A stretch of 64,000 bases of DNA from the NCBI GenBank assembly GCA_047495785.1, contig JBLDXI010000031.1, positions 930,001-994,000 on the forward strand, given 5' to 3'. Origin of the DNA: Lepidodermella squamata. Lineage: Eukaryota > Animalia > Gastrotricha. Each line of letters starts with the position of its first letter. The stretch's first letter is position 1. The notes below the pieces were generated by a model. That model saw nothing but the letters and a program-made list of their open reading frames with translations. It was not told the origin of the DNA and did no database searches. Made by a program: the position numbers and the translations under genes. Positions 11,942 through 45,700 of this stretch are shown here, piece after piece.

Positions 11942-14900
11942 ATGGAGGATTGTGTTCCGGTGGGATCGACGTTGTTCAGGAAGCTGAATTTGTACGCGTT
12001 GGATGAATGGCAGACCACGCCGCACCCTGAGACCAAAGACCTGGTCAATTTGAGCTATTTCAAGCTGTTTCCAGCGCCATTTGGCGGTCCTTTCGGTATT
12101 TTCCGCTTAAATACGTAAAATACAGGAAAATTTGAGATTAAATATTTACAGCTTTGGTTCGCGATGAGTCGAAATTCTCGCAGTTTGTCCGCGATGGCAG
12201 GCCTATGCCGATCAGAATTTACACTACAACATGCTCTGCAAAACCTATTGGAACATTTTTGGTAAATTACCTGTTAGGTTATGATAAAAAGTGGAAGTGA
12301 CTTATTTTGGATTTTTCTCGCATTTTACTGGCTATGTTTAAATTTTTTTACAACGAAAATATCATTTTGATCAAAAAGGTGGTTATTGATTTTACAGATA
12401 AAAACAAAAAATACAGTTTTTCAGTTTCTCAATTTTTGAAAATTGGCCAGTTGTTTTCCTACCAATTTTTTCGAATATTTATATCTCCAATTCGCGAAAA
12501 GTTTCGGAACATTTTTTCGTGAGGCGATTCATGGTACTCAAGTATGAATATAGGATCCTAATTTTGATCTACCTTATTATCAACCCTTTTTTCTTCGAAA
12601 TTGGTAAGATTTTTCAAAATTATGTCCTAAATTCGAGAAAATTGCCCAAATTGCCCAAATACATATTAAGAAAAATAATTCCCGTTATAAAATATACACG
12701 AATTTTTATGGCAATTCTGGCAATTCTTGAGATTTTTCGCATCGCCTCAATTCTAGATATATAAATTCATTTGTTATATTTTCAGTGGGAAGGCGAAAAA
12801 CTGCTGAAAGTCGCGTGGACTCATGACGAAAATCTGCTATGCGTTCAAGTCGACGGCACCATCCGCATCATGTCAATGTTCGGCGAAAAGCTGCGCGAGT
12901 TCAAAATGGACGCAGACGGGCGCGTGGTCGACGCCATGCCAGTCTACCCAAGCGACTTCACCAACACCGGCCTAGTCGCGCTAAACGCCATCGGCCGCTT
13001 CATCTACATCCCGGATATCTCCGCTGAATCTGGGCAGTTGAAGCGATTCGAAGATATACCTCAGTTATCGCTGGACGCTATCAAATGGACCGTAGCTCTA
13101 ACGCCGAACTACACGCGGCTTTTCGTGATAAGCAACGAAAGAGACCTATATCAGACCGATTTAGACGGGACCCTGGTTAAATTGACGTATCCAACGTTGA
13201 GTTTTTCGAAGTTTATCAACGTAGCAGTCAGCGTTGGGTCGATTTACCTCGCGTTATTGACTGATAGATCGGTGATTATCACAACAACAGGCGACCCGGT
13301 TCGAATAACTATCGAGCATGTGCTATCGCAGCCGGCCGACTCGACGTGTTCGTTGTACTGGGTCGGCACAGATGCCGTTGCGTTGTTTCGCCCATCGTTC
13401 GGGTTGACAATCTTCCAAATGGCGTCGAGTGATAACCACTCGGAAATGGTCGACCAACCCGCGTATTTTGTGCCTGAGGTCGATGGGCTGAGGATTGTAA
13501 CGAGTTCAGCTCATGATTTCATGCACGCCGTGCCGCAGGAGGTTTCTGAGGTGTTGGCCCTCGGCTCGCAAAGCCCGGCTATGTACCTGTACGAGGCGAA
13601 TAAGTTGTTCCGCGAGGGCAAGGCCAGCGGGGCGACTGAGTACCTAGACAGCGGGGTGCGTTTGAGGCTTGAAGAGGCCGTTTCGCGGTGTATCTCCGCT
13701 GCGTTGTACGAGTACAAGCCTGGCCTGCAGAAGCAACTGCTTGAGGCTGCGAATTTGGGGCGGTGTTTCCTGCTGGCGACGAGTGCTGGTCGGCTGTCGT
13801 GGCGGGCGGAGACCGCGGAGATGGTGCGCGTCATCAGGATTTTGCGTGTGCTCAACCAGTGTCGTGAATACATGCCTGGAATGCCGCTCACGTACAAGCA
13901 ATTCTGCGTGTAAGTTGCATTTTTTATGGCTTGAATGGGTCTAAGGTTCCAGCTCTAAATTTGAGCTTTTTCTTTTCTCGATCAATAAGGAGTTTTTACT
14001 TTGGCTCTCTGGTATCAACAGCTAGGTAGAAATTTTGTAATGTAAGCCACGATTAAGTGCCTGGATGTAAAACATTTTTAGTACGTAAAAGGTCGGTTAG
14101 GTTTATGACAGAGGTTGGAGAAAAAGGGCATTGTGATTTGGTGCAGTTTTGATCGAGGTAGTGCTCGCCGATGGTACAAAGTTTCTCTTGGTTAGTCGCG
14201 TCACAATGTTGTGTAATTCTTTTCGAAGCCGGTACTACGCTGCTAGGGCAACCGATGTATTGCTATTCGCTTTCGTTACAACTGAGAAGATAACGTTTCG
14301 CAAAGTGTATTTGGGTGCACCATTTGTCGTTGATAGTTGATAGCCCAGTGTTACAGCACCAACAAGTGTATTTATTATGAGAGTGATTTCCAAAGCGAGT
14401 TGGCATTATTTGTTTCAAGGTGTTGGATTTCCAAGTGATTTGCATATTTTCTCCAAAAAATAGAGCAAGCGGTTTGATTGCATCTTTAGCTTTTTCTGCT
14501 ATCCTGTCACCAAGCAACGGCAAAGATAATCTGAAAACGTCAGTGATGGCGTTTTTGTAGGCTCGGCAGAGTGTGTACAGCGTATCATTCGTTTTACGGT
14601 GTTGAACAATAAATTTCTTTTGATGGACACCGAGTGAAAAGAATTAGCTAGGAGTATGTGGTCGGGAACCATTGGCTTTTTGTAAAATTTGTAAATCAGT
14701 TTGGCGGTAAAATTGGTGTAAATCGGATGGTCTTCCATTTTGAAAGTTCTCGAGCAGTGAGCCAACAAAATTCATCATTTCTCGATCGCCTCGTGTTCTA
14801 ACTGACGATTAGGCGCTGTTAGCAAGTTGATAACCGATCCCATTGATTCCACAACCGATTCAATCAGAGAAATCGCATCTCATAAGAATTTGCTCCATGA

Positions 14901-17028
14901 CTTCCTCTTTAAGCTTACTCGATTGCGGTCTAAGTTCTTCGCATTGCTACTTCGTCGCGTCAACAATCGAGTAGAGAGAGAGTCGGACTCTCTGCGAACG
15001 TTATCACGAGTGTTGTGAACGATATCGGCAGCTAGAGCGGAGAGGTTTTTCGGATATTGCGCGAAAGTTCACTGCGAGGTTGTAGGGACTCGCAAAAGAA
15101 ATGAAATAAAATTTGAAACGACAGTTTCCGACGTTTCCGACTGTTATGCCACGTCTCACTGGTCGACAATACTGATTCAGAGCTGGGAAACCAGCCGCTT
15201 TACAGATAAAACGAGCGTCGATGACGGTTTGGAGCGGGTCTTTAACCTGACGGAGCTTATGCAACAAAGTCTCGTGTTGCTGAGAATGCTGTCAATCACT
15301 CGAACTTGATGTGGCGCAAATTTAGTCACGCTGCTTGAACTTGAGACCAAGATCGAGTGACGTTTGCGAATCGCGTAGTTGTTGGTAGGCTAAGCCGAAG
15401 TTGAAAATAGAAGCGAGTTGTTTGAAACCTTTTTCGACTGATGGAAACCGTTTTCGAACAGCCGTTCTCAGCCAGATTTCCGAGATGAAGGGATTTACGA
15501 AAATTGAGATGTTGTAAAATTAAGCATTATGAAAAGACAAAACACTATTGGCCATATTATTTTTATTGTTCGTAGAATTTAATGAATGGATTTTTATGAC
15601 TGTAAATTCTGCTTCGGCAATAATTCGTGCAATTTCTTAGTACTTTCTTCATATTTTCTTAGGTTCTATCAACGGAACTATCCTCTTGCCGGATTTCAGT
15701 GGCTGCTCTTACGACTGACAAAGCGCAGGCAACCCGCGTTGGCCTTCCAAATGTGCGACTATCTGGCCTCAGCCGAAGACTGCGTGCCAATCGACAGCCA
15801 ATCAGGCGTCTCATCGCAATTTCAAGCCAACCAATCACATGCAGTCATCACCCCAGGAGCCGTGCCAACATCCTCGCCACTCCACGAAACAGTCCTGCGA
15901 ACCTGGGCAACATACAAACTTAACCAAACTCGAGAAAGCGAGGAAGCCGTTGCAGCTGCTTTGTTGTCGAAACTTGCGAAAAGTAACCTCCTACCCGAAA
16001 TCGCGAGAATGGCTATCGATAGTGGCCGAAGGGTTATTGCGAGAAAGTTGATCGAAGCTGAACCGAGGGCGACGAAGCAGGTCCCGTTGTTACTTCAAAT
16101 CGGCGAATTTCAACTCGCCTTGGCTCGAGCGGTTGCGTCGCATAACCCGGATTTGATTTCCGGAGTTATGGACGACCTGCGGAAGGCGATGGACAATAAC
16201 CAAGCCTTCCTTGTCCTACTCCACCGCCACGAATCCGCAATCAAATTTTACCTGCAGCAATTGGAGGAACGGCATGATTTTGACTCGTATTTGAAAATCG
16301 CAGATCAGGAGAGTGATTATCTAGGCCAGGCAGTGTTTTATTTACAGGCCAGCATCAGACCGGGTAATGAAGACCCGAGAGATTCACTACGCAGATCGGC
16401 GGAACAGTTCAGCCGTAAAAAGGGCCTCGAATGGGCGAAAGAAAGCGTTGATTCGTGCCGGTTGCTGTTAGAACGGCAGACTAAACTTGACAATGAGTTA
16501 CAGACCACCACAAAACGCACGTCTTTGAGTGAAACAATACGCCAGTTGGGCAAGTCCCAGCGCATCACCACAGCACTTGCGATGAAAAAAGAATTTAACG
16601 TTTCTGATAAGGTGTTCTGGTGGGCCTATGCCAACGGCCTGGCAGATGGCTCGAATTGGGAGGCGTTGGAGGAATTCACGCGGGGCAAGGCGAAAACGCC
16701 TTTTGGCCTGATAGGGGTGCTTGAAATATGCGCGGCTCATAACCACACGAATACGCAAGATGTGACAAGCTACATTGACCGCCTCGACCCGGCAGATCGG
16801 GTCAAGGGGCTGGTTATGGTCGGGCGCTTCGACAAGGCGTTTGAGGTTGCGAGTAAGTCATCACCAAAGACGATAGAAGCCGACCTTGCGCTGATTTCGA
16901 AACGGCTGCCGAACACTCAGACCGAATTGAAAGGCCGAGTTAAGGAGTTGCTAAGAACTCTTCACGAATCGCAACCCGCCGGTGTGTCTATTGGCGGTTT
17001 TCGAATAGGAGCTAGTTCCAGGCGGTGA
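11942..17028 (+). CDS. VPS16: Vacuolar protein sorting 16 (HOPS/CORVET subunit); exons approx. 11942-12095, 12152-12261, 12786-13909, 15663-17028
   Basis: N-terminus MEDCVPVGSTLFRKLNLYALDEW, then APFGGP, EVDGLRIVT, LRVLNQ..GMPLTYKQ, EPRATKQVPLLL and KKEFNVSDKVFWW, all characteristic of Vps16. Confidence 0.93.
14040..15450 (-). mobile_element. Degenerate Penelope-like retroelement fragment in the VPS16 intron
   Basis: FYKKP...NSFHSVSIKRNLLFNTVKRMIRC resembles the PLE RT thumb/linker. Downstream C..C and RYLLSC..*QYIG..RITQH resemble GIY-YIG. Many stops and frameshifts; boundaries approximate. Confidence 0.6.
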
Positions 17029-17797: not shown

Positions 17798-18116
17798 GGA
17801 TGAAAATTATGAATCGTATATGGCTTATAAGCCGACTCAACGACCCTTATATTTTTCGAACGAATCACTTTTATGACGCAACAGGTGAGAGCATGAAGAG
17901 CCTCAATAGTCAAGCGCACGAAATGTTCAGAAATTTCCGCTAAATATCTTGAATTAGCAAGACATAACATATCATAAGTCTTTAGGGGTAATCGGGACTG
18001 ACTTGCTCAGCTCGTTTTGTTCCAGGACTTCCAAGAGCTCTGCAAAGGTAGGACGGTGAGCCTCAGGACACTTCCAGCATGAATTCAACATGATTTCATA
18101 TCTAGAATAGGAATAT

Positions 18117-19065
18117 GAGTATGTTATCATACAAGCTCTCGGCGATAGCCGCTCGTGCTGAATTTTATCTGACGAGGCGTAGCCGAGTCGGGGCACGAGC
18201 GGCTATTGCAGAGAGCGAGGATGCATAACAATTCGTATACCACACCAGATGTTGATCGCTTGACGATTTAAAAATGTTTGCTGAGTATCAGGTGAAGCTA
18301 CAATTTTTCCCAACAATTGTCGCCAAAATTCTGTTTGCAGGGTAACATCAGGTTGAAAAACAACACCTGATGCTGCTCGCGAATTCGAAGCCCATTTTAT
18401 TCTTCATTTCATTTTGCAAAATTTGTTGGTCGATGCAACATCAATTTCCAGGACTAAACACTATGCCAAATGCGTTCCCGGAATAAGACAAATAGGCAAG
18501 AAGCTGATGCGCTTAGAGAGCTCAAAAAAAATAAAAAATAATCCTCAATTTGAAAATTCACAGGAAAATTCCAGATGAATACTAAAAAATAATTAACCTC
18601 GGCTGCGCCTCGGTCGTGATTTCGAAATTGTCCTCGGCTGAGCCTCGGAAAATGGCTCGGTTTCACCTCGCTGAATTCACTGGGCCTTGCGGCCCATGTT
18701 GGTACAACATCATTTTCTTGTTTCAACCTAATTCCCGCTAAAGTTGATAAATTTCAAAATCCTAAATTTTACAACTTATCAGGTTTACGATCCTACCTAA
18801 ATTACTTATCAGTTTTACGACACCAGCGTCTAAATTACTTATCGGTTTTATGGCCCCATCTAAATTACTTATTTATCTGCATCGAGCTCGAAATTTCAGT
18901 AACGATAAATTTTATCCACTTTAACGATCTCTATTTTTAGTAAAAATCTGGCGCCTCAGCAAACACAGGTGTCACCAGCCTGTGAAATAACAAAATCCTA
19001 GCATTTTATCATTTTTGGGACGCTAATGCAAAGAGTCAGGCGATCAACAGGTGGTGTAGTATACG
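18117..19065. mobile_element. Non-autonomous ~950-bp element (copy 1) with terminal hairpin and asymmetric inverted repeats, in the last RTK intron
   Basis: Near-identical to 36470-37450. The 31-bp IR 18234-18264/19035-19065 matches 27/31. Internal ~31-bp tandem repeats at 18774-18872. No TSD. Confidence 0.85.
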
Positions 19066-20261
19066 GTCATCAAAGCCTTTTGGGATAAGTTGTTACATTT
19101 TATCAGGGCAAGAACTCGGTTGCTCGAGGCGAAGACCGTTTGAAACTTGAACAATCACCTCGAAGTTATTGTAACCGACATACCGGCATACCGGCTCCGA
19201 GCGGCATACTGAAATAGCAGCGATCTTTGAATATAATTCCTATTACAACGTGCTGAAACTTACGAGAGAATATTTCCCACATAACAACACCAAAGGACCA
19301 AACGTCACTCTTTGGCAAGAACAAATGGTTGCACAGTGATTCAGGAGGGTACCATCTTGTCGGTATTAGACAATTACTCGTTTCGCTTGATCTATAGTAA
19401 GGCTGGCCGGAGGAGACTAAGCGGGACAAACCAAAGTCAGATATCTTCAACATTTCTTCGTTCGACACCAGAACGTTGCGACACGCCAGGTCCCTATGAA
19501 GGCAGTTGCGGGAGGACAGGTATGCCATACCTCGACAGATGTGCTTTGCATATTCGATGAGTTTCTCCAGCTTCCAGAGCCCAATTTCCTTCGAATTCAG
19601 ATGGCGATGTAGGTTTCCTTTTTTCATAAATGGCACTATAATATTGGCTTGGCCGTCAAGAGAGGCAATCCCAATCAAAGACAGAACGTTTTCATGGTTG
19701 AACTCTTTCATTAGCAAAGCTTCTCGTACAATGAAACAACGTCCGTGCAGGTCCTAGGAAATATATTTTTGACGGTAATCTCGACATCTCGTGAACCTGG
19801 CCTTCTTAGGGTCCCTCTGTAAACAGCACCAAAGAAGCCTTGCCCGATTAGATCAGCAATTTCGATGCAAGAGCTGTGAATGTTGATGTCCTTGATCAGA
19901 GGTATCAGATCGCGGCCTTCTGGAGAAGACTCGAGCATTTGCTGAAAATCGCTGAATGCTGTTATGTGCATGGATTGCCGGCGAGTATCAATGATGCCAG
20001 GCTTTGTTTTTCCAGAGTTTCGGCGAGTATAGATCACGTACCAGATAGAAATGCCCAGAAGAATTAGGGCTACTGCGCCTGTTCCTGAAGTGATTATCAT
20101 TGCCGTCCAGCCTTTTCATACAAAAATGCAACAGAGCTAAAGTAGGCCAACTTATGACAGTTACCATCGGAAGCAGTTAGACTGCCTAGGTCTGTGATTG
20201 GACTGCTTTCAGTTTCCGTTATAAGTTTCCGTTTCCGTTCAGTTTCCGTTCAGTTTCCGTT

Positions 20262-21045
20262 CAGTGGTTCTCAAACTATTTTCGCTCCCGGTCAAAAATG
20301 GCGGCCGGTTGGCGACCTTTACGGCCGCATTGCCTCTTGAACCCTCAATCGGCCGCTTGTAATGATAAAATAGGACCTTTCAGGCCGCACGCCTCTACAT
20401 TCGAGAATTTCGAGTTTTCGAGTGCGCTTCTAAGCGGATTGGTTATTAAATTAGGGTTTTGAGCAGCGGGTCTTGACTGAATTTTTACGCGACCCTTGAT
20501 TGGTCAACTCAAGTCGATTCAACTCAAGTCGCCACCCACCACTCTCAAAAAGTTAACAATTAAAAAGTGAAAGAAAGTTTGTGTAATAATTTCCAAATTC
20601 CAAAATTCCTAACCCGTGCATTGATTAACCTTTGCGAGCGAAGCGAGCTTTAGCTGACAATATTTTTCCATAATTCTTTGTGAAAATATGCTAAAAATGC
20701 GTTAAAAGTGGCTTTGAGTCTTTCTCGATGCGATGGTTACCATTTTATTGCTTAAAAGTCAAATATCTTATAAATTGTCGAATTCGAATCAAAATAGGTA
20801 TTGAAAGATTTGAAAGTGAATCAGCGAGCGAAGCGAGAAACTTTCAAGAAAATTGTGGCTATTTATCATTCGGATACGTCGAAGTTTGCTGGATTATTGC
20901 CCAAGTTATGCGAAACCCTGGACTATTCCCCTCGAAAGAGCCGTCCGGCCGCACGCAATGCATGAGATAGGCCGACCTCTGCCGGCCGCCAAAGTGGGCC
21001 TCGCCGGCCGCATGCGGCCGGAAAAACGGGGTTTGAGAACCACTG
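20262..21045. mobile_element. Non-autonomous hAT-type DNA transposon
   Basis: Perfect 15-bp TIR CAGTGGTTCTCAAAC/GTTTGAGAACCACTG and GC-rich CGGCCG subterminal motifs. Probable 8-bp TSD CGTTATAT (21046-53) / CGTTATAA (20217-24), displaced by filler DNA. Confidence 0.88.
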
Positions 21046-22693
21046 CGTTATATCAACAATTCCGGGCGTACCAATAGTTGAAATTTGAGGCCCGCCGGTT
21101 AATGTCAAGGCCGTTGGTCGAGGGTACGAAGGATTGTCAAGAAACTGTGGACACTTTGTCCCGGTTACATTCAGCAAGCTGCAAGCTATCGTTTCTTGAA
21201 TCCATCCGTTTAGAGGAATGAGGTTCAAAAAACGCACGATTCGGGAGCTGTTATCACACGAGTCTTCCTTCAAGTAGATGCCGCCCTGGAAATAAAAATT
21301 GAGTGGGATGCAGGATGCAGTGAATTATTGCTTATAATCACCAGAAGTAGCTGAGTTCCAGTGCTGGTTACGAAATCGAAATAGGTTGCAAAAGAGAGTG
21401 TCGAACCTTCCGTTAAGTCACATGGCAAGAAGTCATGATTTGCACCCGGTGTAAAGCACAAGTAAGTGTCTGAATCGCAACCAGGGCCATAAGGGGTAAG
21501 CTGGCCAAATAAATATTCATAATTTCCGTCATTAGGACACTTGGGACAAGGTTCAGAATAGCTCTCAACGGTCAGCCCGTTACGTGGGGATCGATGCCCT
21601 ACGACAAAGACGAAATTCCACCAATATATTTCGTGACCGGCTAAAGGAGTGAACAATGTTGTATGTTGTTAAAACTTGTCTCAGAGAGGCTGATATCTAT
21701 TGGTTTCCCGAGTCTCGCAATAGCAAGGCCTTTCTTTTCTCCTAGGATCTTGATCGGGACTAGCATTGAGGATATAGATGCGAGCAAACAGTCGTACGGC
21801 ATGATGAAGTGATGCTCATCGAGCATAGCCGAGACACAATTCGTCGTTTTAGTAATGACCCGTCGGAAGAAAGGAAACTGCCCGGCATCTGCGTAGATTG
21901 GCCAATCCGTTGTAGGATATGGAATTGTTGGGAATCCCCTGTAAGACATGGCTTGCCCTGGCATGAGCTGTGGGATCGACTTCTTTCTACAGGTGTTGTG
22001 CGCCAGCATTATCTCATCGAAGCTGAGGCTTAAACGATGCATGGATAAGCATGAAATGGCATCTAATCCATTCCCACTCAGACTGAAGCTAAAAGTGTCG
22101 ACACGTGTGAAGTAAGTAAGATTCGATTGGTACCATAGAGAACGGAGTGAGGGACAAGCATTGTTCGAAGTTTCAGGCTGCTCGAGCAGTCTGAAACTTT
22201 CCCTGATTACTCACGTGCGTCATGATTAGTCACAATGGTTCGATATGAATATTATTTTTATCAATTTTTTGACGGCAAAGCGTTTATACGTCTGCAAAGT
22301 AGGGAAATTATTCGGAAACCTTGCGGAACACCTTGGAACGCCTCTACGGCACATTTCTACTTCACAGCTGTTAAAAATTTATCAATTTTCAAGTTTGAAT
22401 AAATGAATTTTATTAATTAATCAATGCAAAAATAGCACTGGGTTGACTTTCACTGGGGGATCTTGGATAAAAGCATCTGGTGCAATCGCGGATTGAATGC
22501 AAAGCGAGCGCAGGCTGCGTGCTCGCCGGAGAAAATGGTAAAGCACCTTACCTGGATTTCTCGCTCCACAGCTGTCCAGCTGACGCTGATTATAAAAGCA
22601 CCATCATAATCAGCGTTATTAGTTACGCTCACTTTTTTGGCCACTCTGTATAATATCGATGAATCGATCGATGCTCATATAACGTGTAGATGC

Positions 22694-22948
22694 AGACCCA
22701 AGAATTGGACCTAATTACTTATTAGACCCAGATTATGGCGCAACAATCGAAATTTCACTGCATGTCAAGTTGAGTTCTGTGCGTTCCTTGATGTCTTTGG
22801 TCCCAAATTTGATGCCAACAATTTGCCGTCAGACGATTTGCCTTCCGACTCTTCGTTGAACCGGAATAAAAGGTAATAGAAATTTCGACAGACCCGGGAT
22901 TCGGATCTAAATATCGGATCTCGCTGTTTATGTTTGGCAGTTGAAGTG
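22694..22948. mobile_element. Diverged partial copy of the TTAA (piggyBac-like) MITE at 26760-27256
   Basis: Reverse-complement similarity to 26760-27025; ends ...GGCAGTTGAAGTG followed by TTAA. Confidence 0.7.
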
Positions 22949-23722
22949 TTAAACAACTTATCGACAACTGAACCTACAACGGCCTTGGACGGAGTCCCTG
23001 AATGCGTTCTTAAATCGCTGGGAGATTTCTTAGCACTTCTAATATTCCACAAAATCCTCACGTAGGGTACCGAACACTTGGATACTGATACACAAAAATT
23101 TAACCAGCAACTACAGACCTATGCATTTCCATTCTATCATTCTAGCCGTCGTTTAAGAAAACAAGCTAATTTTCAATGACCATTTCGAAAAGGCATGGGC
23201 TAAGGCGAGAAAATGGCTTTTCGCACTGAAATTGGAAGCGCAAAATGGCTTCAATCGAAATTGCCTCAAAGCCAACAGTCTTATCTTTTCGCACAAAAGA
23301 TCTTTTGCTACAAAGAAATTTACTTGGAGCTTATTTTTGCGGCCGATCTAAAAATAGCAACGTTGTCGGTCGGAGAATAAGTGTCGCATTGTACCTGTGG
23401 CCGGAGCTAAGGCTGTTCGGCCGCCGAAAATGCCGCCGGTGAAAAAGTTTTCGGAGAATTGGTCTACAGTCTTATTAAACCTGAAAAGGGTCAACTCTGA
23501 CCATGCTCTGAAATTTGGTTTAGCATAATAGCGCTGCCGTTGGCCACATGCTTTTTTGCTGCCGGAGGCCTGCTTTATTTAGCTTCAGCTTATGATGGCA
23601 GGCATGCGCGTGATAATCACTTGCCTAACACAATACATATGATGCCATGGATGCATGATATCGCTTAAAGATATAATCAAGCTGCATACCTTATTTATAA
23701 ACAGTCTGTTTCAGTTAAAATC

Positions 23723-26700
23723 ATGGCTAAGGTGTCAATTCTTAATACCCTGTCAGCTTTTCTCCTTATTTTTAACAAATATTCGATTCCCTTTGAGCTG
23801 CCCTACAATATGGATTTGCAAGATATCAACTTCATTTCAATTATTCCCAGATCAGGCTCGATTTACAGCGACATAAGTGCTTCACCCGAGAGGTTTTTTT
23901 TATACAAAATGTTACTATGTCTAGTAATTTAACAGCAAGTATTCCAGTATGTTCATATATCCTCTAGAATTCTTCAACGACACTTTCAGCTTTTGCTCGG
24001 AGGACAAATTTTTCCCCGCCTGGAATTTACTACAAGCGCAGCTTTTCCGAGCGATAGCGGATGTAAACAGCAATCGCTCAATTTTGGGCGGCTTGAATCT
24101 TGGCTTTTGCTCGATTAACAGCTTTCAGCTTGCAGCTTTCCAATTTATGCCAGCCGATGGCTCGCTCGACTTGCGGCAAACCGAATAGCCTTAGCTAAAG
24201 AAATTGATTCCATTTTCAAATTGGGCGATCCCGTTCCATTGATAATAGGGGCATTAGAGAGCGACGTCACAGCGGCTGTTCTAGATCGAGCCCAAACTCT
24301 AGATATGCCTGTGATTGATTTCGGCTCCACTGCAGTGGAGTTTGACAACCGAGATAAATATTCGCTATATTCAAGAACAGTTCCTTCGGATGCAGATCAA
24401 ATTTCGGCTATTTTGGATTTGCTGGAAAGTCTGAATAGATCGTCCTGCGGGGTTATACTATACAGTCAAGGCGCATATGGAGAGTCCGCTCACGGTGTTA
24501 TCCGAAATCACTTGAGCTCTTGGCAAGCGGTCAAAATAACCTTTTCGAATGCTGACCAAATAATGAAGCTGTTAAACGCATCACAAGTCGAGACAATTGT
24601 GTGCCTCTGTGAGCGATGGGCATTTTCAAAAGTTGATTTAGTGCTGCGGCAGGTTGATTTCCGAGCAAAGCCTTTAGTTATCGCTGGCCACCTTTGGAAC
24701 GGCGATATGAACGATAAAGATTTCACAAAACCGGGATCCAATTACGACTTCATAGCTTCAGCATTAGCCATGGAGCCAGACTACACTTTCCCAGCTTATT
24801 TAAGCAGCACGGCGTTGGATTACGACCAATCAGGCGAGGGTAATACTATTTAGCTTCGAATTGATAGAAAATTATACACATCTGAACAATAATTTTTCAG
24901 CTTCACTAATTGAGTTTTGGAAATGGGCGATAGCGAAAAATACTCTGCAGTTCAACATTTTACCCTCAGGTATGGATGCTGTATGGATTTTTAAGGAATA
25001 TTGACCAGAATTTAATAGGCATAACGGTTGATGAATCATCATTTCCTGTGAGCAAATACACTTCGAGCATTCAAAAAGCTGTCCTTGCTGCTGTGTATGG
25101 CTTACGTGATTTTCTCAACGCAAGATGTCCCCCAGGAAGTGCAGCGTTGAAGGATAGATGTCCGAGGGCAACGCTGAATCGCTTATTGCTGGATGGCCGA
25201 GAGCTCCAGCGGTACATCGAAAAAGCTAAATTCAATGTACCCGGCATCAGAGAAACTTTCTCGTTCAACGAAAACAATTCTGTCGCGGGGCGATATAATT
25301 TTTCATATTACAACAGCGAGAAATCGCAATGGATAGAATTCCTTATATTGGGCGAAAGACAGTGGGCTTAAGTACTTCGGAAACAGCTCAATGTTCCTTA
25401 TTCAGGCCGCGAACTACACATGTGGCAATGACACAGTTGTGCACAAGTCAAATCAACTCTGGTTCGGATATGGATTGTTTAATACTCCTTGTCATGCAGT
25501 TCGTAAGAAAACCTATAAGATGAGCACTCAACCGAATTGCTCGGATCAGCTCGACGTATGTAAAGTTGTGACTCCATCTAGACAGGAAGCAATTAAAGGT
25601 TGGGATCTGGCAGTCCTGATTACTATCGCCATCTCTCTGGGGGTGATTTTTCTCTGTCTCACCGTTGCAACAACGACTTTCTTCATGCTAAACCGCAGGC
25701 TCACGACAGCCCCAAGCCGCAAACATGGACGATTAGACGAACGAGCCCTGGATGAAATATGGAATAGTGCGAATTTGATCGAGATCCCGCTGAAAAACTG
25801 CGATCAAATCGAAGTTGCTCTTGAGCAATACGAAGCTGGCGAAGAGCTGACAAAGAAATTCGTTGGCTTTGTTACAACCAGCGGTTTGAAATTATCAAAA
25901 AAAAGCATAGCTACAGGACATTATGGGGTTGTTTATGCCGGAGAATTGCAGGACGAGAGAGTCGCCGTAAAAATCCTCAAGTCTAGGAAGCCGGCGGATG
26001 TCGTCGAATTCATCCAAGAGGGTCTGTTAATGGCTTCGTTTGAACACGAAAATGTGCTGCGATTTCGAGGCATGGCTATGATGTCGAACTGGCCCGTTAT
26101 CGTTGTTCCTTTCATGCAAAACGGCAGCTTGCTGAAATTTCTCTTGAAGCATTCAAAATTGAATGGCATCTCTCAAAGCAAACTGTGGACATTCTCTTGC
26201 CAAATATGCAAGGCTATGGTCTATCTCTCATCTGAAAAGTTCATCCATCCATGACATCCATCGGGATCTGGCCTGTAGGAATATCTTAAATTGGCGATGA
26301 AAACCAAGCTATTATTGCTGACTTCGGTCTATCTCGCCAGCTTTACGAAAGCGAGTATTATAAGCCTGCAAACGCAAGCCGACCATTGCCGATTCGCTGG
26401 CACCCACCAGAGTCGCTTCGAAGCGAGAAATTTGGCGAAAAGAGTGATGTATGGTCGTTTGGCATTGTTTTGTGGGAGATTTACAGCCATGGCGAGCGGC
26501 CATATGCCCATATCAAGGAAGAAGCCGACGTTTTTACAGCTGTTTTGGATCGTAACGAGATGCTCCAACTACCCGAGAACTGCCCTAACGAAATGTAAGC
26601 TGTTTGTGTTGACTTTTCAAATAATCTAAACTGCAAAATAGTTACGCGATCATGCAAAGTTGTTGGAAACTCGCAATAGACGAACGACCTTCGTTTTCGC

Positions 26701-26759
26701 AGCTATTAGAACAGTTGGAGATGAACAGAGATACCGCACACTCTTCTGAGTCGATTTAA
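23723..26759 (+). pseudogene. Venus-flytrap (ANF-receptor/class C GPCR-type) receptor tyrosine kinase, VKR-like architecture; frameshifted
   Basis: Signal-like N-terminus. VFT motifs RAIADVNSNRSILGGLNLG, IIGALES, PVIDFGSTAVEFDNRDKYSLYSRTVPSD and AVLAAVYGL. TM LAVLITIAISLGVIFLCL. Kinase motifs GHYG, VAVK, HRDLACRN, DFG, YESEYY and SDVWSFG. Introns ~23893-23968, 24840-24900, 24970-25018, 26595-26641. Four frame-breaking lesions. Confidence 0.85.
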
Positions 26760-27256
26760 CACTTTAACTGCCAAAAATAGACTGCTAGATCCGATATTTG
26801 GATCCAAATCCTGGGTCTGTAAGTCTTTTTTTCGGGTCAACGATGCGTTGTAGAGCTAAAAGCCTGACGGCAAAGTGTAGGCCACGACTCGGCGGTTCTT
26901 TTGACACCAAATTCGGGGCCATAGACTTCAAGGAACGCAGAGATATCAACTTGTAAACACATTGAAATTTCGATTTTTGCGCCATAATCTGGATCTAATA
27001 ATTAAGTCCAATTCTTGGGTCTGATTTTTGGCTATAATCCAAACTTTCGACGCTATTTCACAGTCATTTCTAAAGACATGCTCACACCTTGAGGACCCGA
27101 GTTTGGTGTCGAAAGAACCGCCGGACCATGGTCTACACTTTGCCGTCAGGCATTTTGCCTTGCGACGCATTGTTGACCCGAAAAAGGACATTTTGGCAGA
27201 CCCAGGATTTGGATCCAAATGTCGGATCTCGCAGTCAATTTTTGGCAGTTAACGTG
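26760..27256. mobile_element. MITE with ~160-bp imperfect TIRs, TTAA-type (piggyBac-like)
   Basis: CACTTTAACTGCCAAAAA...TTTTTGGCAGTTAACGTG with long inverted arms. Left flank TTAA, right flank TCGA. A related copy at 22694-22948 ends at TTAA. Confidence 0.8.
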
Positions 27257-27329: not shown

Positions 27330-29359
27330 ATGCATTTTGTAGTATTATTGTTACTGCCGTACCTTGCAAGTAATGCCTTGGTGCAACAGACTGAGCTCGG
27401 GGCAAGTACACCATTGCGGTTGGGCTTCGTGTTGCCGATCCACTATCAGGATAATAAATCAAGGTAAACACGGCTGGCAATCAAGCATAAAACCTAAAGT
27501 TTTAAATTTCAGCGGAAAATGTGGAAAGTTAAACCACGACATGGCAGTTTTGTCGGCATTTGCTCGCTGGTACCTTGAAAAATTCAATTTTAATTACGGA
27601 TTTTTGGGCCTCTCGGACCAAAAAGTCGGTTTTTACATGATCGACTCTTGCTCAAATTCTGCTATAGCGCTGGAACATTTTTTTAATCAACGCGCGCTAG
27701 CCGCAACAAATCCTCGCATGACCATCCCGATTTACATCGGACCTGCAAATTCTGAGCTCGCTTTCACCCTTGCACCAGCTTTTGAATCTGCCAAAGTGAC
27801 CTTGGTTAGTTGGGAAATGCCGGTATTGACGTGGTTAAGTTGTTCATTTACAGGTTGATTTCAGCGGCTCGTTCAGCGAGCTAGGCGACAAAACGAAGTA
27901 TCCTCGATACGCAAGGACCAGCCCAGACGATAAGAGCTTAGCAATTGCTATCGCAGATTTATTAGTCGATGCTTTTAATCAAACGTGCACGCTCGTAATC
28001 TATGACGACACGAATTTTATTGACCGATCCGCAGTCGAAGATCTAAGGACCGCCTTCAGAAACACTGGGCTGTGTGTTGCCGGTGAAATAGATTCTAAAA
28101 CTCCCTTCCAGGCACTCAACACCTCTGCTACTCACGTCGTTTGCCTTTGTCGAACAAATACATTATCGAAACTTATGAAAGCACTCAGAGGACGAAAAAC
28201 AAGCATCAAAATTGTTTTGGCGAGGTGCGTTTGAAAAAAGTTCAATCCTCACCTAGGGTTTATCTAGCCTTTTGAAATTGAGGGTGGGTAGTCGTAAAAT
28301 GGGATCGTAAAAAATGGACATAAAAAGCTCAAAAATAGCAAAAAGCTCGAAAGTTTGGGGTTGGGTAGCCAAATTTTGTGGGTGGGTTGAGGGTGACTAG
28401 ATAAACCCTTGCTCCTCACCAAGTTAATACAAGCGCTCTTGTAGTGATCCTGACGGAGGATTTGAAAACTTCAGGGAGAAAGTGGATGTAGGTCTAGTCA
28501 AGATTTCGCCTTTCCTTGGATCGATTCCGGGTGAGAGTGATTTTCGAAGTTGGCTAGCCAAAAGGCCTGTGTTGGACTCAACAATTGAACCTTGGCTCTC
28601 TGAGTGGATCGATGGTAGGATAATTAGCCTGTGCAATTCCTAGCAATGATTGCTATTGTTTTAGAGGGCGGAAATGTGGCGGAAATGAAATTAACCAGCT
28701 TTGCTTATCATTTGGGTGCGGCGATTTACTCAGCCATTCTAACTATGGAGAAAGTGGGGAAAGAATACTGTGCTGCTAAAAAAGAAAACTTATTCAACTG
28801 CTTGGTCAACGGAGATGATGCTTTCGCAAATTCTTCGAGGTTAGAAAGCCATGTTTACGAAATGGACCCTACCTCACTGGGACTGCCGTTTTCTTGGGAG
28901 AAAGATGGAAGTCCACCAGCAAGCTATGCATTTTACTCAATGGGTAGTGATTCAATGTGGACAAGAATTGCTACCTGGAACCTTCGGGAACGCGCTATTC
29001 GTGTCATCGATAGCAATGAAGCTAGAACAGCCTTCGACAGCCTTACAGGCCTTACCTCTTCCACCTGCCCCGCTGATATTTGCGACCGGAAAATGAATGC
29101 TATGAATATATCGATCAAGCAGTGTCCAGTAATTCGACCGATCGCAACATCGGTGACTACGCCAATTAACGAAACAAACGCAACGACCGCAGCATGTCAA
29201 ATTACGTCGAAAGCTGACAATGCGGCAGCTATCGTAGGGGCGATCCTCGGCTTTTTGCTGCTGGTCATTTCGATTGTTTTCATAATTTTCTGTTTGAGAA
29301 GTCGGCAAAAAGTCAAAAGGACTCAACAGCGGCTAGCAGAGCATAATGCGCCGCTATAA
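27330..29359 (+). CDS. Single-pass Venus-flytrap receptor with ~20-aa cytoplasmic tail and no kinase; exons 27330-27463, 27513-27804, 27853-28224, 28445-28614, 28664-29359
   Basis: Signal peptide MHFVVLLLLPYLASNA. VFT motifs LGFVLPIH, GFYMIDSCS, YIGPANS and VDFSGSFSELGDKTKYPRYARTSPDD. TM AAIVGAILGFLLLVISIVFIIFCL. The spliced frame is open; AATAAA at ~29407. Confidence 0.82.
28253..28411. mobile_element. G-rich MITE with 8-bp TSD (P- or hAT-type), copy in an intron
   Basis: TIR CTAGGGTTTATCTAG/CTAGATAAACCCTTG; flanks ATCCTCAC/CTCCTCAC; homologous to 32816-32981. Confidence 0.85.
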
Positions 29360-42761: not shown

Positions 42762-45700
42762 TCACGCCTTAATCTGGCGAGGCGTCCGAGGCTGCACGGG
42801 TATATCATCAGGCGGCGTGCCAACCATGTAAACAATACAGCCAATCAACAAACAAACGCAAGTCGCAATGACCAAATAGCCGTACTGGTTCGGATACGGC
42901 AGGCAAATTACAGCGATTAGCCGTATCAAATCAACGAGCTGGTTCAGCGAACCCTGCACCCCGTTCACCACGCCCCGTTCCGAGGCGGCTACTCGCTCGA
43001 CCAAGGCCTGATTTATCGACAAATCAGTGCCCCACAGCGTCATTCGAGACATGATCACAGCTGCCATTAGCACCCATAAATGCGGAAATTTGAATCCCCC
43101 GATTTCTTCCCCCTCCAAACAGTTGATACCCGGTATGGATGTCGCGTTGGCAGTTGAGTTATCCGATAAATTAAAATTCAACGCAACCGTAGTTGTTTCT
43201 AGTAAAATTGGTTCGAGACTAGTAAAATTAGCTGTTTCATTCTGATTTTGCTGCGACGGAAGACTTGTCAATTTGTTGATATGCAGCGGCTGGAACGGAG
43301 ATCCGGGCAGTGCGACGGAAATCGCGGCTATGCCGATGAAGAACACGTGGCCAATGTAGAAGGAAGCGCCGCCGGCGCGCAGGCCGAAGCGTTTGCGAAC
43401 GTGCGGGAAGACGATGGTGCCGACGAGGCCGAGCACGAAGCTGCCGATACGGATCGCCGCGACAACCAATTCGGATATGCATAACGAGCGAACGTAGGCA
43501 GTTGTCACGCCGTCGAATGACACAACTAAAAATACAGAAAAAAATAGCATATGATCAGTGTCATCGATTTGGTGATATTGAGAAAGTTTATGAATATTGC
43601 CCAACTACGGAAAAGTTCTGCCGAGGTCCTACCAGCGATCTTTTAGCTTCACTAAGAGACACCAAGTCGCCAGAATCGCTCAGGTTGCAAGGTTAACATT
43701 CATGACTACGAAATTTCCCCATGAGGGCGCGGAATCCAAGCGCCTGTCTCTCGATCTCAAGACATTATACCTGCTGTAAACTGTATCTTCCATGTAACCC
43801 ACACTCATCCTCCCACTACAACATCGCATAACTATTCAACAACTGCTACGACATCGACAGCCAAAATCTGTCTCGGTTAGGGAGTTTGATGGATGATAAC
43901 TGATAGCCAATGAGTCAATGGCGAAGGGACAACGAGGGTGGTAGGCGGTAATTTGGGAGGATTCGGTCAGAATCGACCTCTTCGTCGAACGCAGCGGCCT
44001 CGTCGGCGTGGAAATAGTATGTGAGAAGATTCGGTTTCTTGTAGGCAGACGTTGACTTATCCAGTTTTTCAACCACATTGTTGAGGCAAGGTCCAAGTTC
44101 AGATTCACGGACAGCTTCGATGTAATCAGGGTACTTACCCAGAGGGCCGTTAGAGCGAATCAATCGCCTTAAATTCGGCCAAATGTTTAACCAGGCGAGC
44201 AATGCTGGGCCATGGATTCAAATTTATCAACGTATGAAGACCATATCCGCTACCCGAGCCAAGGTGGAAATACGTGGAAATGTTATCATCTTTCTGTAAA
44301 ATCAGCCATGAGCATGCGCTTTTCGGGTCATTTGATTCTCCTATTCTCCCTTGATTTTGAAGAGATGCTCATCACAAAAACATGGGGTGAGGTTTTTCCC
44401 ACTTTTAACCGGCTTTGAATTCATTAGGCCTTGTTGTCTCCATTATTTAGAATTTTAATGAAAAATCCAATTATTTATCGATTTTTACTTCGTAGGCCTT
44501 CGTCGGAGTTCATTGAAAAGAACGATGCGCTGATGAAATGCCTTATTGCGAAAATAGTTCAGGGCCAATTCGATACTTCGATGGCTATACTTGCGGTTCG
44601 ACTAGAATTATACAAATATAGCGGAGCTATACAAATCACGATTCTGTCTCCATGGGTACAAATTTGCGTCGGAATTTGACTGGAAGAAAAACGTCACTAC
44701 GGGCAATAACGTCATTGATTTGATCAACAGTAACGAGGAGTATTTTCTGTCCACTGAAGTTCCGGTTATTATTTACGGCGCGGAGCACTCGAGCCACGCT
44801 GGGTGGCACTATCATGGCTATGAAAAGCTGATTGCTACAAATTATGACACCGCCAGCGGGCAATCGCCCATTTCTACGGATTACTCATCGGCTGGTCAGA
44901 CCACGCATTCAGACAGATCGTGGCTACTGAAGCCGATCCGATCAGGCTTCCTGCGGAAGAAGGATGTCTTACCGTTTGATGATGACATCGATCTTATGGC
45001 GTCACGCTATTACTACCAGAAATCGGGAAAAATCTTCGAAAGCGGGAAACCAATGAAGAATAACGAAAATCTGAGGATCATGACTATTAAGCCAGGATGC
45101 AGCTGGGTAATTGGTCAACACGAGATCGTGGCTACTCAAGCCGATCCGATCAGGCTTCCTGCGGGAGAAGGATGTCTTGCCGTTTGATGATGACATCGAT
45201 CTTATGGCGTCACGCTATTACTACCAGAAATCGGGAAAAATCTTCGAAAGCGGGAAACCAATGAAGAATAACGAAAATCTGAGGATCATGACTATTAAGC
45301 CAGGATGCAGCTGGGTAATTGGTCAACACGAGATCGTGGCTACTCAAGCCGATCCGATCGATTGGAACAAGAGTGATCAGCGTGACTTAGCTATCCATTC
45401 CAGTAATGCGTTATCTCTGATAGACGATTGACTCACATCTCGCCTAGTCGGGTTGATCTTTCAATACCTAACCATTTCCTCGATTGTTCTCTGGAAAACC
45501 ATAACTAACGTGCTGTGTTTCTCCTCCTAGATTTGTTATACATACTGAGGGACAAATGGCTGCTGCTGAATCTTCACACGCTGACATTTGTTGATGTCAA
45601 TGTAGCAAAATGTTGCATTAAAATGGTTTTCTTGCCAAATATGAAAACCAAATGATGCCATCCAACCTCTAATTTGCGTCGGAATTTGGCTGGAACGTTA

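What the first reader, a model, noticed from the sequence alone, without database searches (positions are those of the whole stretch)
23723..26759. Venus-flytrap kinase receptor that may be convergent with, not orthologous to, known VKRs
Established: Venus kinase receptors of schistosomes, insects and other invertebrates join a flytrap domain to an insulin-receptor-like kinase. Seen: this kinase reads EFIQEGLLMASFEHENVL and PVIVVPFMQNGSL, closer to MET/AXL (EGIIMKDFSHPNVL; V.LP(Y/F)M) than to the ME(L/F)M hinge of InR/VKR. The flytrap has mGluR/CaSR-like motifs (YSRTVPSD). Inference: an independent origin of an amino-acid/ion-sensing RTK. The YxxxYY loop does not discriminate between the families.
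Basis: partly seen in the sequence, partly recalled or inferred. Interest (0 to 1): 0.75.

Follow-up and report, generated by a model that had tools for sequence, protein, structure and literature searches.

The report
Non-VKR flytrap receptor tyrosine kinase
An unidentified invertebrate gene joins a glutamate-receptor-type "Venus flytrap" ligand pocket to a tyrosine kinase through one membrane helix, the layout of the known Venus kinase receptors but apparently built from different parent domains; the copy in this assembly is broken by three small insertions that another data set of the same species lacks.

Summary
At 23723-26759 (+) lies a six-exon gene for signal peptide, flytrap (Pfam ANF_receptor), Cys-containing stalk, one membrane helix and a tyrosine kinase.

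The gap at 26254-26302 is not an intron. The window carries three frame-breaking insertions (8, 13 and 1 nt) that contigs of a same-species run lack. As assembled, this copy is a null allele or carries assembly errors.

The independent-origin reading is favoured but not proven.
- **Flytrap:** a profile of this family hits all mGluRs (129-160 bits), then CaSR (98). An Aedes VKR flytrap hits GABA-B (109) and mGluR at 43 or less. Profile-profile score is 402 against mGluR-like flytraps and 79.5 against VKR flytraps.
- **Kinase:** it is not insulin-receptor-like. It shares derived motifs (HRDLACRN, RW(H/Y)PPES) with the neighbouring receptor kinase, whose ectodomain is different.
- **Trees:** ML trees keep both domains outside a 100/100 insect-VKR clade. 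AU tests do not reject a sister position (p 0.15-0.22). No non-insect VKR, GABA-B or insulin receptor sequences were available.

The MET/AXL affinity is weak. Earlier notes of this scan describe the same family elsewhere in this genome.

The parts
23723..23892 (+). Exon 1: start codon and hydrophobic N-terminus (MAKVSILNTLSAFLLIFNKYSIP..., likely signal peptide)
   Evidence: Translation. A GT donor at 23893 keeps the phase. The signal-peptide call is my reading of the sequence and was not run through a predictor.
23893..23935 (+). Intron 1, 43 nt, GT..AG
   Evidence: Phase bookkeeping and the sequence. There is no RNA support.
23936..24839 (+). Exon 2: flytrap lobe 1 and part of lobe 2. It carries GALES (24248), FGST (24320), RTVPSD (24374) and AYGES (24473).
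   Evidence: Pfam ANF_receptor E 9e-14; PDB best hits mGluR5/1/8; motif coordinates.
24123..24130 (+). Extra 8 nt (TTTCAGCT) that shift the frame inside exon 2. A stop follows at 24186-24188.
   Evidence: The 8 nt are left out in X2 at depth 277 of 328. A loose end in X1 (GATTAACAGC before 24131) fits the same deletion. Without them the conserved ...LGF.I.(D/N)SC motif of relatives is restored.
24840..24900 (+). Intron 2, 61 nt, GT..AG
   Evidence: phase; sequence.
24901..24969 (+). Exon 3: SLIEFWKWAIAKN..., matching the mGluR-type '(NPW)F.EFW' stretch
   Evidence: The consensus of mGluR-like flytraps reads NPWFxEFWE.
24970..25018 (+). Intron 3, 49 nt, GT..AG
   Evidence: One X1 contig joins 24967 to 25017, with GT..AG ends when the cut is placed 2 nt further right. 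Depth is 7.8 and only 28 nt lie on the shorter side, so support is modest. A 1-nt deletion at 24988 in X2's divergent contig lies inside this intron.
25019..25365 (+). Exon 4: C-terminal part of the flytrap (...FNENNSVAGRYNFSYYNSEKSQWIEFLILGERQW)
   Evidence: It groups with the P0107 flytrap at 98/95*. Translation.
25366..25405 (+). Proposed intron 4, 40 nt, GC..AG (unverified)
   Evidence: It is the only intron of 40 nt or more that keeps the conserved flytrap end and enters the stalk/TM frame, and it makes the whole model a multiple of three. The alternatives are a 25-nt GT..AG intron or a real stop at 25369-25371.
25406..26594 (+). Exon 5: four-Cys stalk, membrane helix (25604-25690), juxtamembrane region and kinase. 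Kinase landmarks are ATGHYG at 25907, VAVK at 25961, HRDLACRN, DFG at 26320, YESEYY at 26344 and RWHPPES at 26395.
   Evidence: Pfam PK_Tyr_Ser-Thr; coordinates; alignment.
26249..26261 (+). Extra 13 nt (CCATGACATCCAT) between FIH and RDLACRN. In this frame the protein stops at 26252-26254.
   Evidence: X2 lacks 13 nt here at depth 192 of 192. X1 covers the site at depth 3 without the deletion. Indexing.
26289..26289 (+). Extra 1 nt (A run) between RNIL and IGDEN
   Evidence: X2 lacks 1 nt at 26288 at depth 192 of 192. Frames.
26595..26641 (+). Intron 5, 47 nt, GT..AG, phase 2, after CPNE
   Evidence: The neighbouring kinase gene has an intron at the same position and phase (CPDK+AT|GTAA).
26642..26759 (+). 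Exon 6: kinase end (YAIMQSCWKLAIDERPSF...), a tail of about 12 residues without tyrosine, and the stop
18060..22200 (-). Neighbouring receptor kinase gene of the same kinase family (HRDLACRN at 19498, RWYPPES). No flytrap was detected in its ectodomain ORFs.
   Evidence: Pfam PK_Tyr E 2e-50. No ANF_receptor hit in the ectodomain ORFs. It is sister to the window kinase at 65/85. Shared intron position.
27364..29359 (+). Downstream paralog: flytrap (RTSPDD at 27914), stalk, membrane helix and a tail of about 22 residues, with no kinase
   Evidence: Pfam ANF_receptor E 3e-12 for 27866-28228 and a TM-like hit. There is no further kinase motif on the + strand of the window. Its pieces fall in the family clade.

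Best explanation
The locus encodes a single-pass receptor tyrosine kinase of about 924 residues. Its ectodomain is an mGluR-type Venus flytrap without the class C cysteine-rich domain. It belongs to a small family: this gene, a kinase-less paralog next door, and two metagenome proteins, P0107 and P0160. The flytrap of this family descends from the mGluR/CaSR branch of class C receptor flytraps. Its kinase belongs to a lineage-specific receptor-kinase radiation that also supplies the neighbouring gene, which has a different ectodomain. The layout equals that of Venus kinase receptors but most likely arose by a separate domain fusion.

Inferred mechanism: a small ligand, probably an alpha-amino acid, binds between the lobes. 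The residues matching mGluR1 Ser165, Thr188, Asp208 and Tyr236 are kept; Asp318 is not. Lobe closure in a dimer then brings the kinases together for trans-phosphorylation of the YESEYY loop. The allele in this window cannot make the receptor, because three insertions break the frame. An intact allele exists in run X2.
For: **Architecture:** shown by Pfam. An in-phase model of 2775 nt results once the three insertions are left out.

**Flytrap parentage:**
- The exon hits mGluR5/1/8 in PDB.
- The family profile hits mGluR1-8 at 129-160 bits over 4-392 of 432 profile positions, then CaSR at 98 bits. No GABA-B chain is in the best 60.
- The Aedes VKR flytrap hits GABA-B at 109 bits and mGluR at 43 or less.
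- hhalign gives family against mGluR-like 402 (E 5e-55, 389 columns), family against VKR 79.5 (165 columns), and VKR against mGluR-like 210.
- Of the 150 best hits among 1.84 billion representatives, only P0107 carries a kinase. Nine of the eleven further hits of 796-1155 aa that I scanned are class C GPCRs with 7tm_3.
- blastp of the flytrap exon finds P0107 and an mGluR but no VKR.
- In the ML tree the family (82/84, or 92/92 without fragments) is nested among the mGluR-like and other flytraps returned by the flytrap-exon search, and VKRs form a 100/100 clade on a branch of 3.1.

**Kinase:**
- The family clade has support 69/98 and lies outside the 100/100 VKR clade.
- Shared derived motifs are HRDLACRN, RW(H/Y)PPES and a longer activation loop.
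- The intron position is shared with the neighbouring kinase gene.
- The VKR kinase hits SmVKR2, IGF1R and InsR; the P0107 kinase hits TYRO3, MER and AXL.
- hhalign scores run TAM 467, FGFR 455, Eph 434, ROR 407, VKR 391.

**Ligand residues:** read from the alignment. The mGluR1 residue numbers are from my own knowledge.

**Coding constraint:** 19 of 33 listed differences to a roughly 9% divergent X2 contig fall on third codon positions (p 0.004).

**Published definition of VKR:** a GABA-B-type flytrap plus an insulin-receptor-type kinase (PMC2680970).
Against: - AU tests do not reject VKR plus family as one clade for the kinase (p 0.148) or the flytrap (p 0.217 and 0.187).
- All VKRs sampled are from insects. 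No cnidarian, lophotrochozoan or echinoderm VKR could be obtained, and no GABA-B, NPR, iGluR, insulin receptor or vertebrate MET sequence either.
- The family rows have long branches (1-3 changes per site), so their placement is uncertain.
- Deep receptor-kinase relations are unresolved. The TAM/MET lead is only about 10-20 bits.
- The exon 4/5 junction needs a rare GC donor and has no RNA support.
- This copy is frame-broken.
- Ligand, dimerisation and kinase activity are all inferred.
Confidence: 0.7

Rival explanations
1. It is a fast-evolving true VKR ortholog. One ancient flytrap-kinase fusion gave both the insect-type VKRs and this family, and the differences reflect divergence.
For: The layout is the same: flytrap, no Cys-rich domain, one helix, a kinase with a YxxxYY loop. 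AU tests leave a sister position open for both domains. VKRs also have a Cys or Ser in HRD(L/I)A(C/S)RN. VKR flytraps are very divergent between phyla (PMC3703292).
Against: The family flytrap matches mGluR-type flytraps over its full length far better than VKR flytraps (402 against 79.5). The VKR flytrap profile is itself closer to mGluR-like flytraps (210) than to the family (79.5). The VKR hallmarks RTIGEN and GYVWFLPLWL are absent, as is the ME(F)M hinge. PDB best hits differ reciprocally for both domains.
Confidence: 0.15
2. This locus is a dead copy (pseudogene) in the sequenced genome. The three insertions are real, and the receptor is no longer made from this haplotype.
For: The three insertions (8, 13 and 1 nt) each break the frame. 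X1, an older run from another study, covers the 13-nt site without the deletion, so at least that insertion is seen in more than the assembly. The 8- and 13-nt insertions look like local duplications rather than homopolymer errors.
Against: X2's main contigs are otherwise identical (0 substitutions over 863, 387, 379 and 269 nt) and lack all three insertions. That pattern fits assembly errors or very young alleles. Downstream frames are still free of stops. X1 coverage is only about 3, and its contigs include paralog-like pieces.
Confidence: 0.4
3. There are two genes. A secreted flytrap-only protein ends at the TAA at 25369-25371, and a separate TM-kinase protein starts at the ATG at 25391.
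For: No canonical GT..AG intron of normal length bridges the two frames. An ATG opens the downstream frame 20 nt after the stop. Earlier notes of this scan report secreted flytrap-only genes elsewhere in this genome (unchecked).
Against: P0107 and P0160 carry flytrap, helix and kinase in one uninterrupted ORF. A 40-nt GC..AG intron with a good acceptor makes the whole model in phase. MFLIQAANYT is not a signal peptide. The stalk's Cys pattern resembles that of the paralog, which is contiguous there.
Confidence: 0.1
4. It is a receptor guanylyl-cyclase or natriuretic-peptide-receptor relative, in which an ANF_receptor domain sits before a kinase-like regulatory domain.
For: Pfam's ANF_receptor plus PK_Tyr_Ser-Thr pair also occurs in those receptors. 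Databases often name VKRs that way.
Against: No cyclase domain follows: the gene stops at 26759, about 12 residues after the kinase. The catalytic residues K, E, HRD and DFG and the YxxxYY loop are present. The flytrap hits mGluRs, not NPRs.
Confidence: 0.02

Closest known systems
Venus kinase receptors (VKR; Schistosoma, insects, cnidarians to echinoderms; PMC2680970, PMC3703292)
   Same: The layout is the same: Venus flytrap, no cysteine-rich domain, one membrane helix, and a tyrosine kinase with two adjacent activation-loop tyrosines. The expected logic is also the same: a small ligand closes the flytrap and switches on the kinase.
   Different: The VKR flytrap is GABA-B-like (92% bootstrap in PMC2680970) and carries RTIGEN and GYVWFLPLWL. 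This flytrap is mGluR-like and carries RTVPSD, YGES and EFW. The VKR kinase is insulin-receptor-like with a ME(F)M hinge and RWMAPE. This kinase has VVPFM and RWHPPES and no insulin-receptor affinity.
Metabotropic glutamate receptors and mGluR-like class C GPCRs
   Same: The flytrap aligns over its full length with mGluR1-8 (E 1e-45 to 1e-36). The positions matching the alpha-amino-acid contacts Ser165, Thr188, Asp208 and Tyr236 are kept.
   Different: There is no NCD3G cysteine-rich domain and no 7tm_3 domain. Output goes through a tyrosine kinase instead of a G protein. The Asp318 position is His.
TAM (AXL/MER/TYRO3) and MET/RON receptor kinases
   Same: The hinge and N-lobe are alike: (V/I)(L/V)PFM.(H/N)G.L, and GHYGVVY compared with MET GHFGCVY. 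They give the best PDB hits for the N-lobe (MET 58 bits) and for P0107 (TYRO3 222 bits), and the top hhalign score (TAM 467).
   Different: Margins over FGFR, Eph and ROS are small. The tree does not join them. There is no Sema/PSI/TIG or Ig/FN3 ectodomain and no docking tail.
Choanoflagellate kinases with VKR-like layout (Monosiga UTK12, Salpingoeca RTKS), as noted in PMC3703292 and PMC4026697
   Same: They are another reported case of a flytrap-like ectodomain on a tyrosine kinase outside the canonical VKR set.
   Different: No sequences were available to me, so the relation was not tested. The relatives found here sit on contigs with short spliceosomal introns and a nuclear-receptor-type zinc finger, which suggests an animal.
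Receptor guanylyl cyclases / natriuretic peptide receptors
   Same: ANF_receptor ectodomain, one membrane helix, and a kinase-fold domain.
   Different: No cyclase domain is present, the kinase motifs are intact, and the flytrap is of the mGluR type.

Membership tests
Venus kinase receptor (VKR) | Layout: flytrap, single membrane helix, tyrosine kinase | tested here: met
   Pfam domains and the helix at 25604-25690. The model is in phase.
Venus kinase receptor (VKR) | Flytrap of the GABA-B receptor branch (PMC2680970) | tested here: not met
   The family profile hits mGluR at 129-160 bits and CaSR at 98, with no GABA-B in the best 60. The Aedes VKR control hits GABA-B at 109 and mGluR at 43 or less.
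Venus kinase receptor (VKR) | Kinase of the insulin-receptor branch | tested here: not met
   The Aedes VKR control hits SmVKR2 at 269, IGF1R at 258 and InsR at 254. The window N-lobe hits MET/RON with no InsR in the best 60. P0107 hits TAM with no InsR, IGF1R or VKR2 in the best 60.
Venus kinase receptor (VKR) | Conserved VKR motifs: R-T-I in the pocket, GY(V/I)WFLPxWL, PVRWMxPE | tested here: not met
   The window reads RTVPSD against VKR RTIGEN. GYVWFLPLWL is nearly invariant in insect VKRs and is not seen in the window translation. The window reads PIRWHPPES.
Venus kinase receptor (VKR) | Both domains fall in the monophyletic VKR group | tested here: inconclusive
   Both lie outside the 100/100 insect VKR clade in the ML trees. 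AU does not reject a sister position (p 0.148, 0.217, 0.187). Non-insect VKRs were not available.
Venus kinase receptor (VKR) | At least one intron position shared with vkr genes (PMC3703292) | not tested
   No vkr gene structures were mapped. The window's intron positions are listed.
Class C GPCR (mGluR type) | mGluR-type flytrap | tested here: met
Class C GPCR (mGluR type) | Cysteine-rich NCD3G domain and 7tm_3 domain | tested here: not met
   Neither domain is found in any exon. One helix is followed by a kinase.
MET/RON or TAM receptor kinases | Kinase groups with MET/RON or TAM; Sema or Ig/FN3 ectodomain | tested here: not met
   The best hits have small margins. The best tree places the family next to a weakly supported (67/85) group of TAM, FGFR-like and VKR kinases, joined by a 27/9 branch, and not with TAM. 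The ectodomain is a flytrap. No vertebrate MET sequence was in the tree.
Receptor guanylyl cyclase | Guanylate cyclase domain after the kinase-like domain | tested here: not met
   The stop at 26757-26759 comes about 12 residues after the kinase. There is no such Pfam hit.

The most novel reading that the evidence does not exclude
The flytrap kinase and the kinase-less flytrap-plus-helix gene 600 nt downstream work as an obligate pair, as GABA-B R1/R2 do. One flytrap binds the ligand and the other partner carries the output. This would be an mGluR-style dimeric amino-acid sensor wired to tyrosine phosphorylation, invented independently of VKRs. The frame-breaking indels would segregate as presence/absence alleles, as in chemosensory gene families.
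Probability: 0.15. Interest if true: 0.75.

Novelty: new variant of a known kind. Interest (0 to 1): 0.55.

Why it matters
Venus kinase receptors are treated as one monophyletic invention: a GABA-B-type flytrap joined to an insulin-receptor-type kinase. A second family with the same layout, built from an mGluR-type flytrap and an unrelated kinase, would show that wiring a small-molecule clamp to a tyrosine kinase is a repeatable solution.

The neighbouring gene carries the same kinase module behind a different ectodomain. This gives a local example of how receptor kinases diversify by ectodomain exchange.

The family also offers a natural test of whether mGluR-type lobe closure can drive a single-helix kinase.

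Tried and rejected
- **Exon searches.** The word-index search with the TM plus N-lobe exon found only one short fragment. The length window excludes full-length relatives.
- **Joined protein.** Exons were searched by reference. In scripts, pieces were joined with X only across the three frame breaks inside single exons.
- **ESM Atlas.** Neither call gave anything useful: the kinase exon, and Vps16, which I tried as a way to place the organism.
- **JGI metagenomes.** The profile scan gave no relative. A degenerate PIRW(H/Y)PPE(S) DNA pattern gave 12 loci. Eleven were chance matches and one (L005) was a kinase without a flytrap.
- **Topology tests.** AU tests, meant to reject VKR plus family, did not reach significance in three runs.
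- **RTVPSD motif.** I do not use it as an mGluR/CaSR marker against GABA-B. From memory, GABA-B receptors also carry RTVPSD-like strings. It does separate this gene from insect VKRs, which read RTIGEN.
- **X1 loose end at 25338.** It looked like a possible splice but is a 95%-identical piece, most likely from a paralog.
- **Insect 'MET-like' protein.** The Sema-PSI-TIG protein P0196 grouped with FGFRs in the tree, so it is no proxy for MET.
- **Neighbouring gene's ectodomain.** I could not confirm this: Pfam finds nothing in the two ORFs tried.
- **Organism.** It could not be identified.
Full report
**What is there.** The window is intron-containing eukaryotic DNA of about 43% G+C. On the + strand between 23723 and 26759, Pfam finds a Receptor-family ligand-binding region (ANF_receptor, E 9e-14) in 24221-24853. 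It also finds the two halves of a tyrosine kinase in 25391-26254 (E 5e-24) and 26302-26598 (E 6e-29). Between them lies a 29-residue hydrophobic helix followed by NRRL (25604-25690).

**Gene model and state of this copy.** I laid the contigs of two public runs on 23600-26800. Run X2 holds 89% of the stretch's sampled words.
- Its main contigs show 0 substitutions over pieces of 863, 387, 379 and 269 nt.
- They lack 8 nt at 24123-24130, 13 nt at about 26249-26261 and 1 nt at about 26289.
- Without the 8 nt, exon 2 reads through ...LGFCSINS|CSFPIY..., which restores the (D/N)SC motif that relatives have at that place.
- Without the 13 and 1 nt, the kinase reads ...SEKFIH|RDLACRNIL|IGDENQAIIADFG....

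The window copy is frame-broken three times.

Run X1 is older, from another study, and only guessed to be RNA. It seems to lack the 8 nt but covers the 13-nt site without the deletion, at depth 3. At least that insertion may therefore be a real allele rather than an assembly error. I could not settle this, because read laying is capped at one call.

X1 also has one contig that skips 49 nt with GT..AG ends (intron 24970-25018). Only 28 nt lie on the shorter side, so this is modest support.

The remaining junctions were set by phase.
- Exons: 23723-23892, 23936-24839, 24901-24969, 25019-25365, 25406-26594 and 26642-26759.
- Introns: 43, 61, 49, 40 and 47 nt.
- With the three insertions left out, the exons sum to 2775 nt, that is 924 codons plus the stop.
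- The 40-nt intron needs a GC donor and has no RNA support. The alternatives are a 25-nt intron or a true stop at 25369.

A roughly 9% divergent X2 contig differs from the window mainly at third codon positions (19 of the 33 listed sites in exon 2; binomial p 0.004). That is what a coding frame under constraint looks like.

Exons were searched by reference. In scripts, pieces were joined with X only across the three frame breaks inside single exons.

**Relatives.** A full HMMER search of 1.84 billion representatives with the flytrap exon found nothing above 42% identity. Only one of the 150 best hits carries a kinase: P0107, 892 aa, from an ENA metagenome. Nine of the eleven further hits of 796-1155 aa that I scanned are class C GPCRs with 7tm_3, some named mGluR-like (Saccoglossus, Araneus, Stylophora); the best single-flytrap hit, named CaSR-like (Amphimedon), showed only flytrap domains.

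A second metagenome protein, P0160 (863 aa), has the same layout. Both sit on 5-8 kb contigs of 38-39% G+C. The P0107 contig (L003) has a short intron in the gene and a weak nuclear-receptor zinc-finger gene nearby, which points to a small animal.

These two proteins share unusual motifs with the window gene.
- All read PIRW(H/Y)PPES where other tyrosine kinases read WMAPE.
- HRDLACRNILI is identical in P0160.
- All have a slightly longer activation loop.
- In the flytrap, they read (F/Y)(A/S/T)R-T/V-.(P/A)SD and Y-G-(E/T)-(S/E).

The kinase gene on the opposite strand at about 18.1-22.2 kb also has HRDLACRN and RWYPPES. It has an intron at exactly the same position and phase (CP(N/D)(E/K)+AT|GT). 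Its ectodomain ORFs show no flytrap. One kinase module therefore sits behind at least two kinds of ectodomain within 8 kb.

About 600 nt downstream lies a paralog with flytrap, stalk, helix and a tail of about 22 residues but no kinase.

Two scans of JGI metagenomes found no further member.

**Is it a VKR?** The literature defines VKRs as a GABA-B-type flytrap joined to an insulin-receptor-type kinase, monophyletic for both domains (PMC2680970; PMC3703292). I fetched twelve insect VKRs, among them the Aedes, Anopheles, Tribolium, Nasonia and Pediculus proteins listed in that paper. I used the Aedes protein as a control.
- **Control flytrap:** it hits GABA-B R1/R2 in PDB at 86-109 bits, T1R3 at 53 and mGluRs at 43 or less.
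- **Control kinase:** it hits SmVKR2 at 269, IGF1R at 258 and InsR at 254 bits.
- **This family's flytrap profile:** it hits all eight mGluRs at 129-160 bits over nearly its full length, then CaSR at 98. No GABA-B chain is in the best 60.
- **Window N-lobe:** it hits MET/RON best, at 58 bits. The C-lobe does not discriminate: MuSK, SYK, Trk, ROR, MET and InsR score 78-90 bits.
- **P0107 kinase:** it hits TYRO3, MER and AXL at 210-222 bits, closely followed by ROS, FGFR4, Eph and FAK.

Profile-profile comparison of flytraps gives these scores:
- family against mGluR-like flytraps: 402 (E 5e-55, 389 columns);
- family against VKR flytraps: 79.5 (E 9e-10, 165 columns);
- VKR against mGluR-like flytraps: 210.

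For the kinase the scores are TAM 467, FGFR 455, Eph 434, ROR 407 and VKR 391.

**Trees.** The kinase tree (40 rows, LG+C20) recovers insect VKRs at 100/100. The window gene, its neighbour, P0107 and P0160 form one clade (69/98) outside it. Deep branches are unresolved.

The flytrap tree recovers VKRs at 100/100 on a branch of about 3.1 changes per site.
- All eight family pieces form one clade (82/84).
- This clade lies inside a starred (96/94) group, nested among the mGluR-like and other flytraps that the flytrap-exon search had returned.
- With fragments removed, the family is 92/92 and sits next to unnamed flytraps P0078 and P0046 and a Stylophora mGluR3-like group.

The AU test, however, does not reject holding VKRs and the family together.
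- Kinase: p 0.148.
- Flytrap: p 0.217 with all rows and p 0.187 with fragments removed.

These tests therefore have little power. The formal result is that both domains lie outside the insect VKR clade, and a sister position is not excluded.

**Verdict on the interpretation.** The flytrap evidence makes a common fusion event unlikely. The evidence is reciprocal best families, a five-fold profile score difference, full-length mGluR similarity including the EFW and YGES stretches, and the absence of the VKR hallmarks RTIGEN and GYVWFLPLWL. The kinase evidence points the same way, but weakly. I put about 0.7 on an independent fusion and about 0.15 on a very divergent VKR. It is not a supported clade.

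**Likely mechanism (inferred).** The positions that in mGluR1 contact the alpha-amino-acid moiety are kept: Ser in GALES, Thr in FGST, Asp in VPSD and Tyr in AYGES. The Asp318 position is His (residue numbering from my own knowledge). The kinase keeps the VAVK lysine, the helix-C Glu, HRD, DFG and YESEYY. The first Gly of the glycine loop is Ala (ATGHYG). The tail after the kinase is about 12 residues long and has no tyrosine. By analogy with VKRs, which L-arginine activates (PMC2680970), and with mGluR dimers, ligand-induced lobe closure would reorient a dimer and allow trans-phosphorylation. Nothing in this paragraph was tested.

**Novelty.** I found no paper describing an mGluR-type flytrap on a non-insulin-type tyrosine kinase. 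The VKR reviews mention only look-alikes in choanoflagellates. Earlier notes of this same scan (s1-393971, s1-422679, s1-407533) report the same family at other places of this genome with the same reading. My result is an independent re-test on a new locus. It adds the frame-breaking indels, the shared kinase module with the neighbouring gene, and the inconclusive AU tests.

Noticed in passing
window 26756-27252: A very high-copy repeat starts right after the stop codon. X2 depth jumps to about 10,600 in the last bin, and many contigs break at 26755-26798. Similar short ORFs (MDPNPGS...TAKCRP...) lie on both strands at 26785-27252 and again at 22755-22967. It is probably a small mobile element.
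   Followed up: no
window 18060-22200 (-): A receptor kinase gene with the same kinase family (HRDLACRN, RWYPPES) and the same last-intron position as the flytrap kinase, but no flytrap. Its last intron is about 1 kb long and holds repeat copies.
   Followed up: partly
window 27364-29359 (+): A kinase-less paralog with flytrap (RTSPDD), Cys-containing stalk, membrane helix and a tail of about 22 residues. It may be a decoy or co-receptor. Its 5' exons and the junction near 27830-27866 were not worked out.
   Followed up: partly
window 42762-47815 and 49135-51311 (-): Two ferroportin (FPN1) genes in tandem.
   Followed up: no
window 12771-17028 (+); 52353-56778 (-); 57232-63983 (-): Ordinary housekeeping genes: Vps16 (N- and C-terminal regions), a tRNase Z / metallo-beta-lactamase-fold gene, and a serine carboxypeptidase S28 gene that runs to the window's end.
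   Followed up: no
window 24375-25068 (run X2, record 11): A second X2 contig at about a quarter of the depth differs at 60 of 690 positions, with an in-frame 3-nt deletion at 24844. It is either a divergent haplotype or a close paralog. Its differences favour third codon positions.
   Followed up: partly
P0159 (Culex pipiens pipiens record, 801 aa): A protein with two tandem tyrosine kinase domains and no other Pfam domain was the second-best relative of P0107. It sits on a 56-kb contig and could be contamination or an odd dual kinase.
   Followed up: no
L001/L002 3934-7082; L003 4888-5703: The metagenome contigs that carry the family members also encode Glyco_transf_92 proteins and a weak nuclear-receptor zinc finger. 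L003 has a short intron in the family gene, and all three contigs have 38-39% G+C. This hints at a small metazoan source.
   Followed up: no
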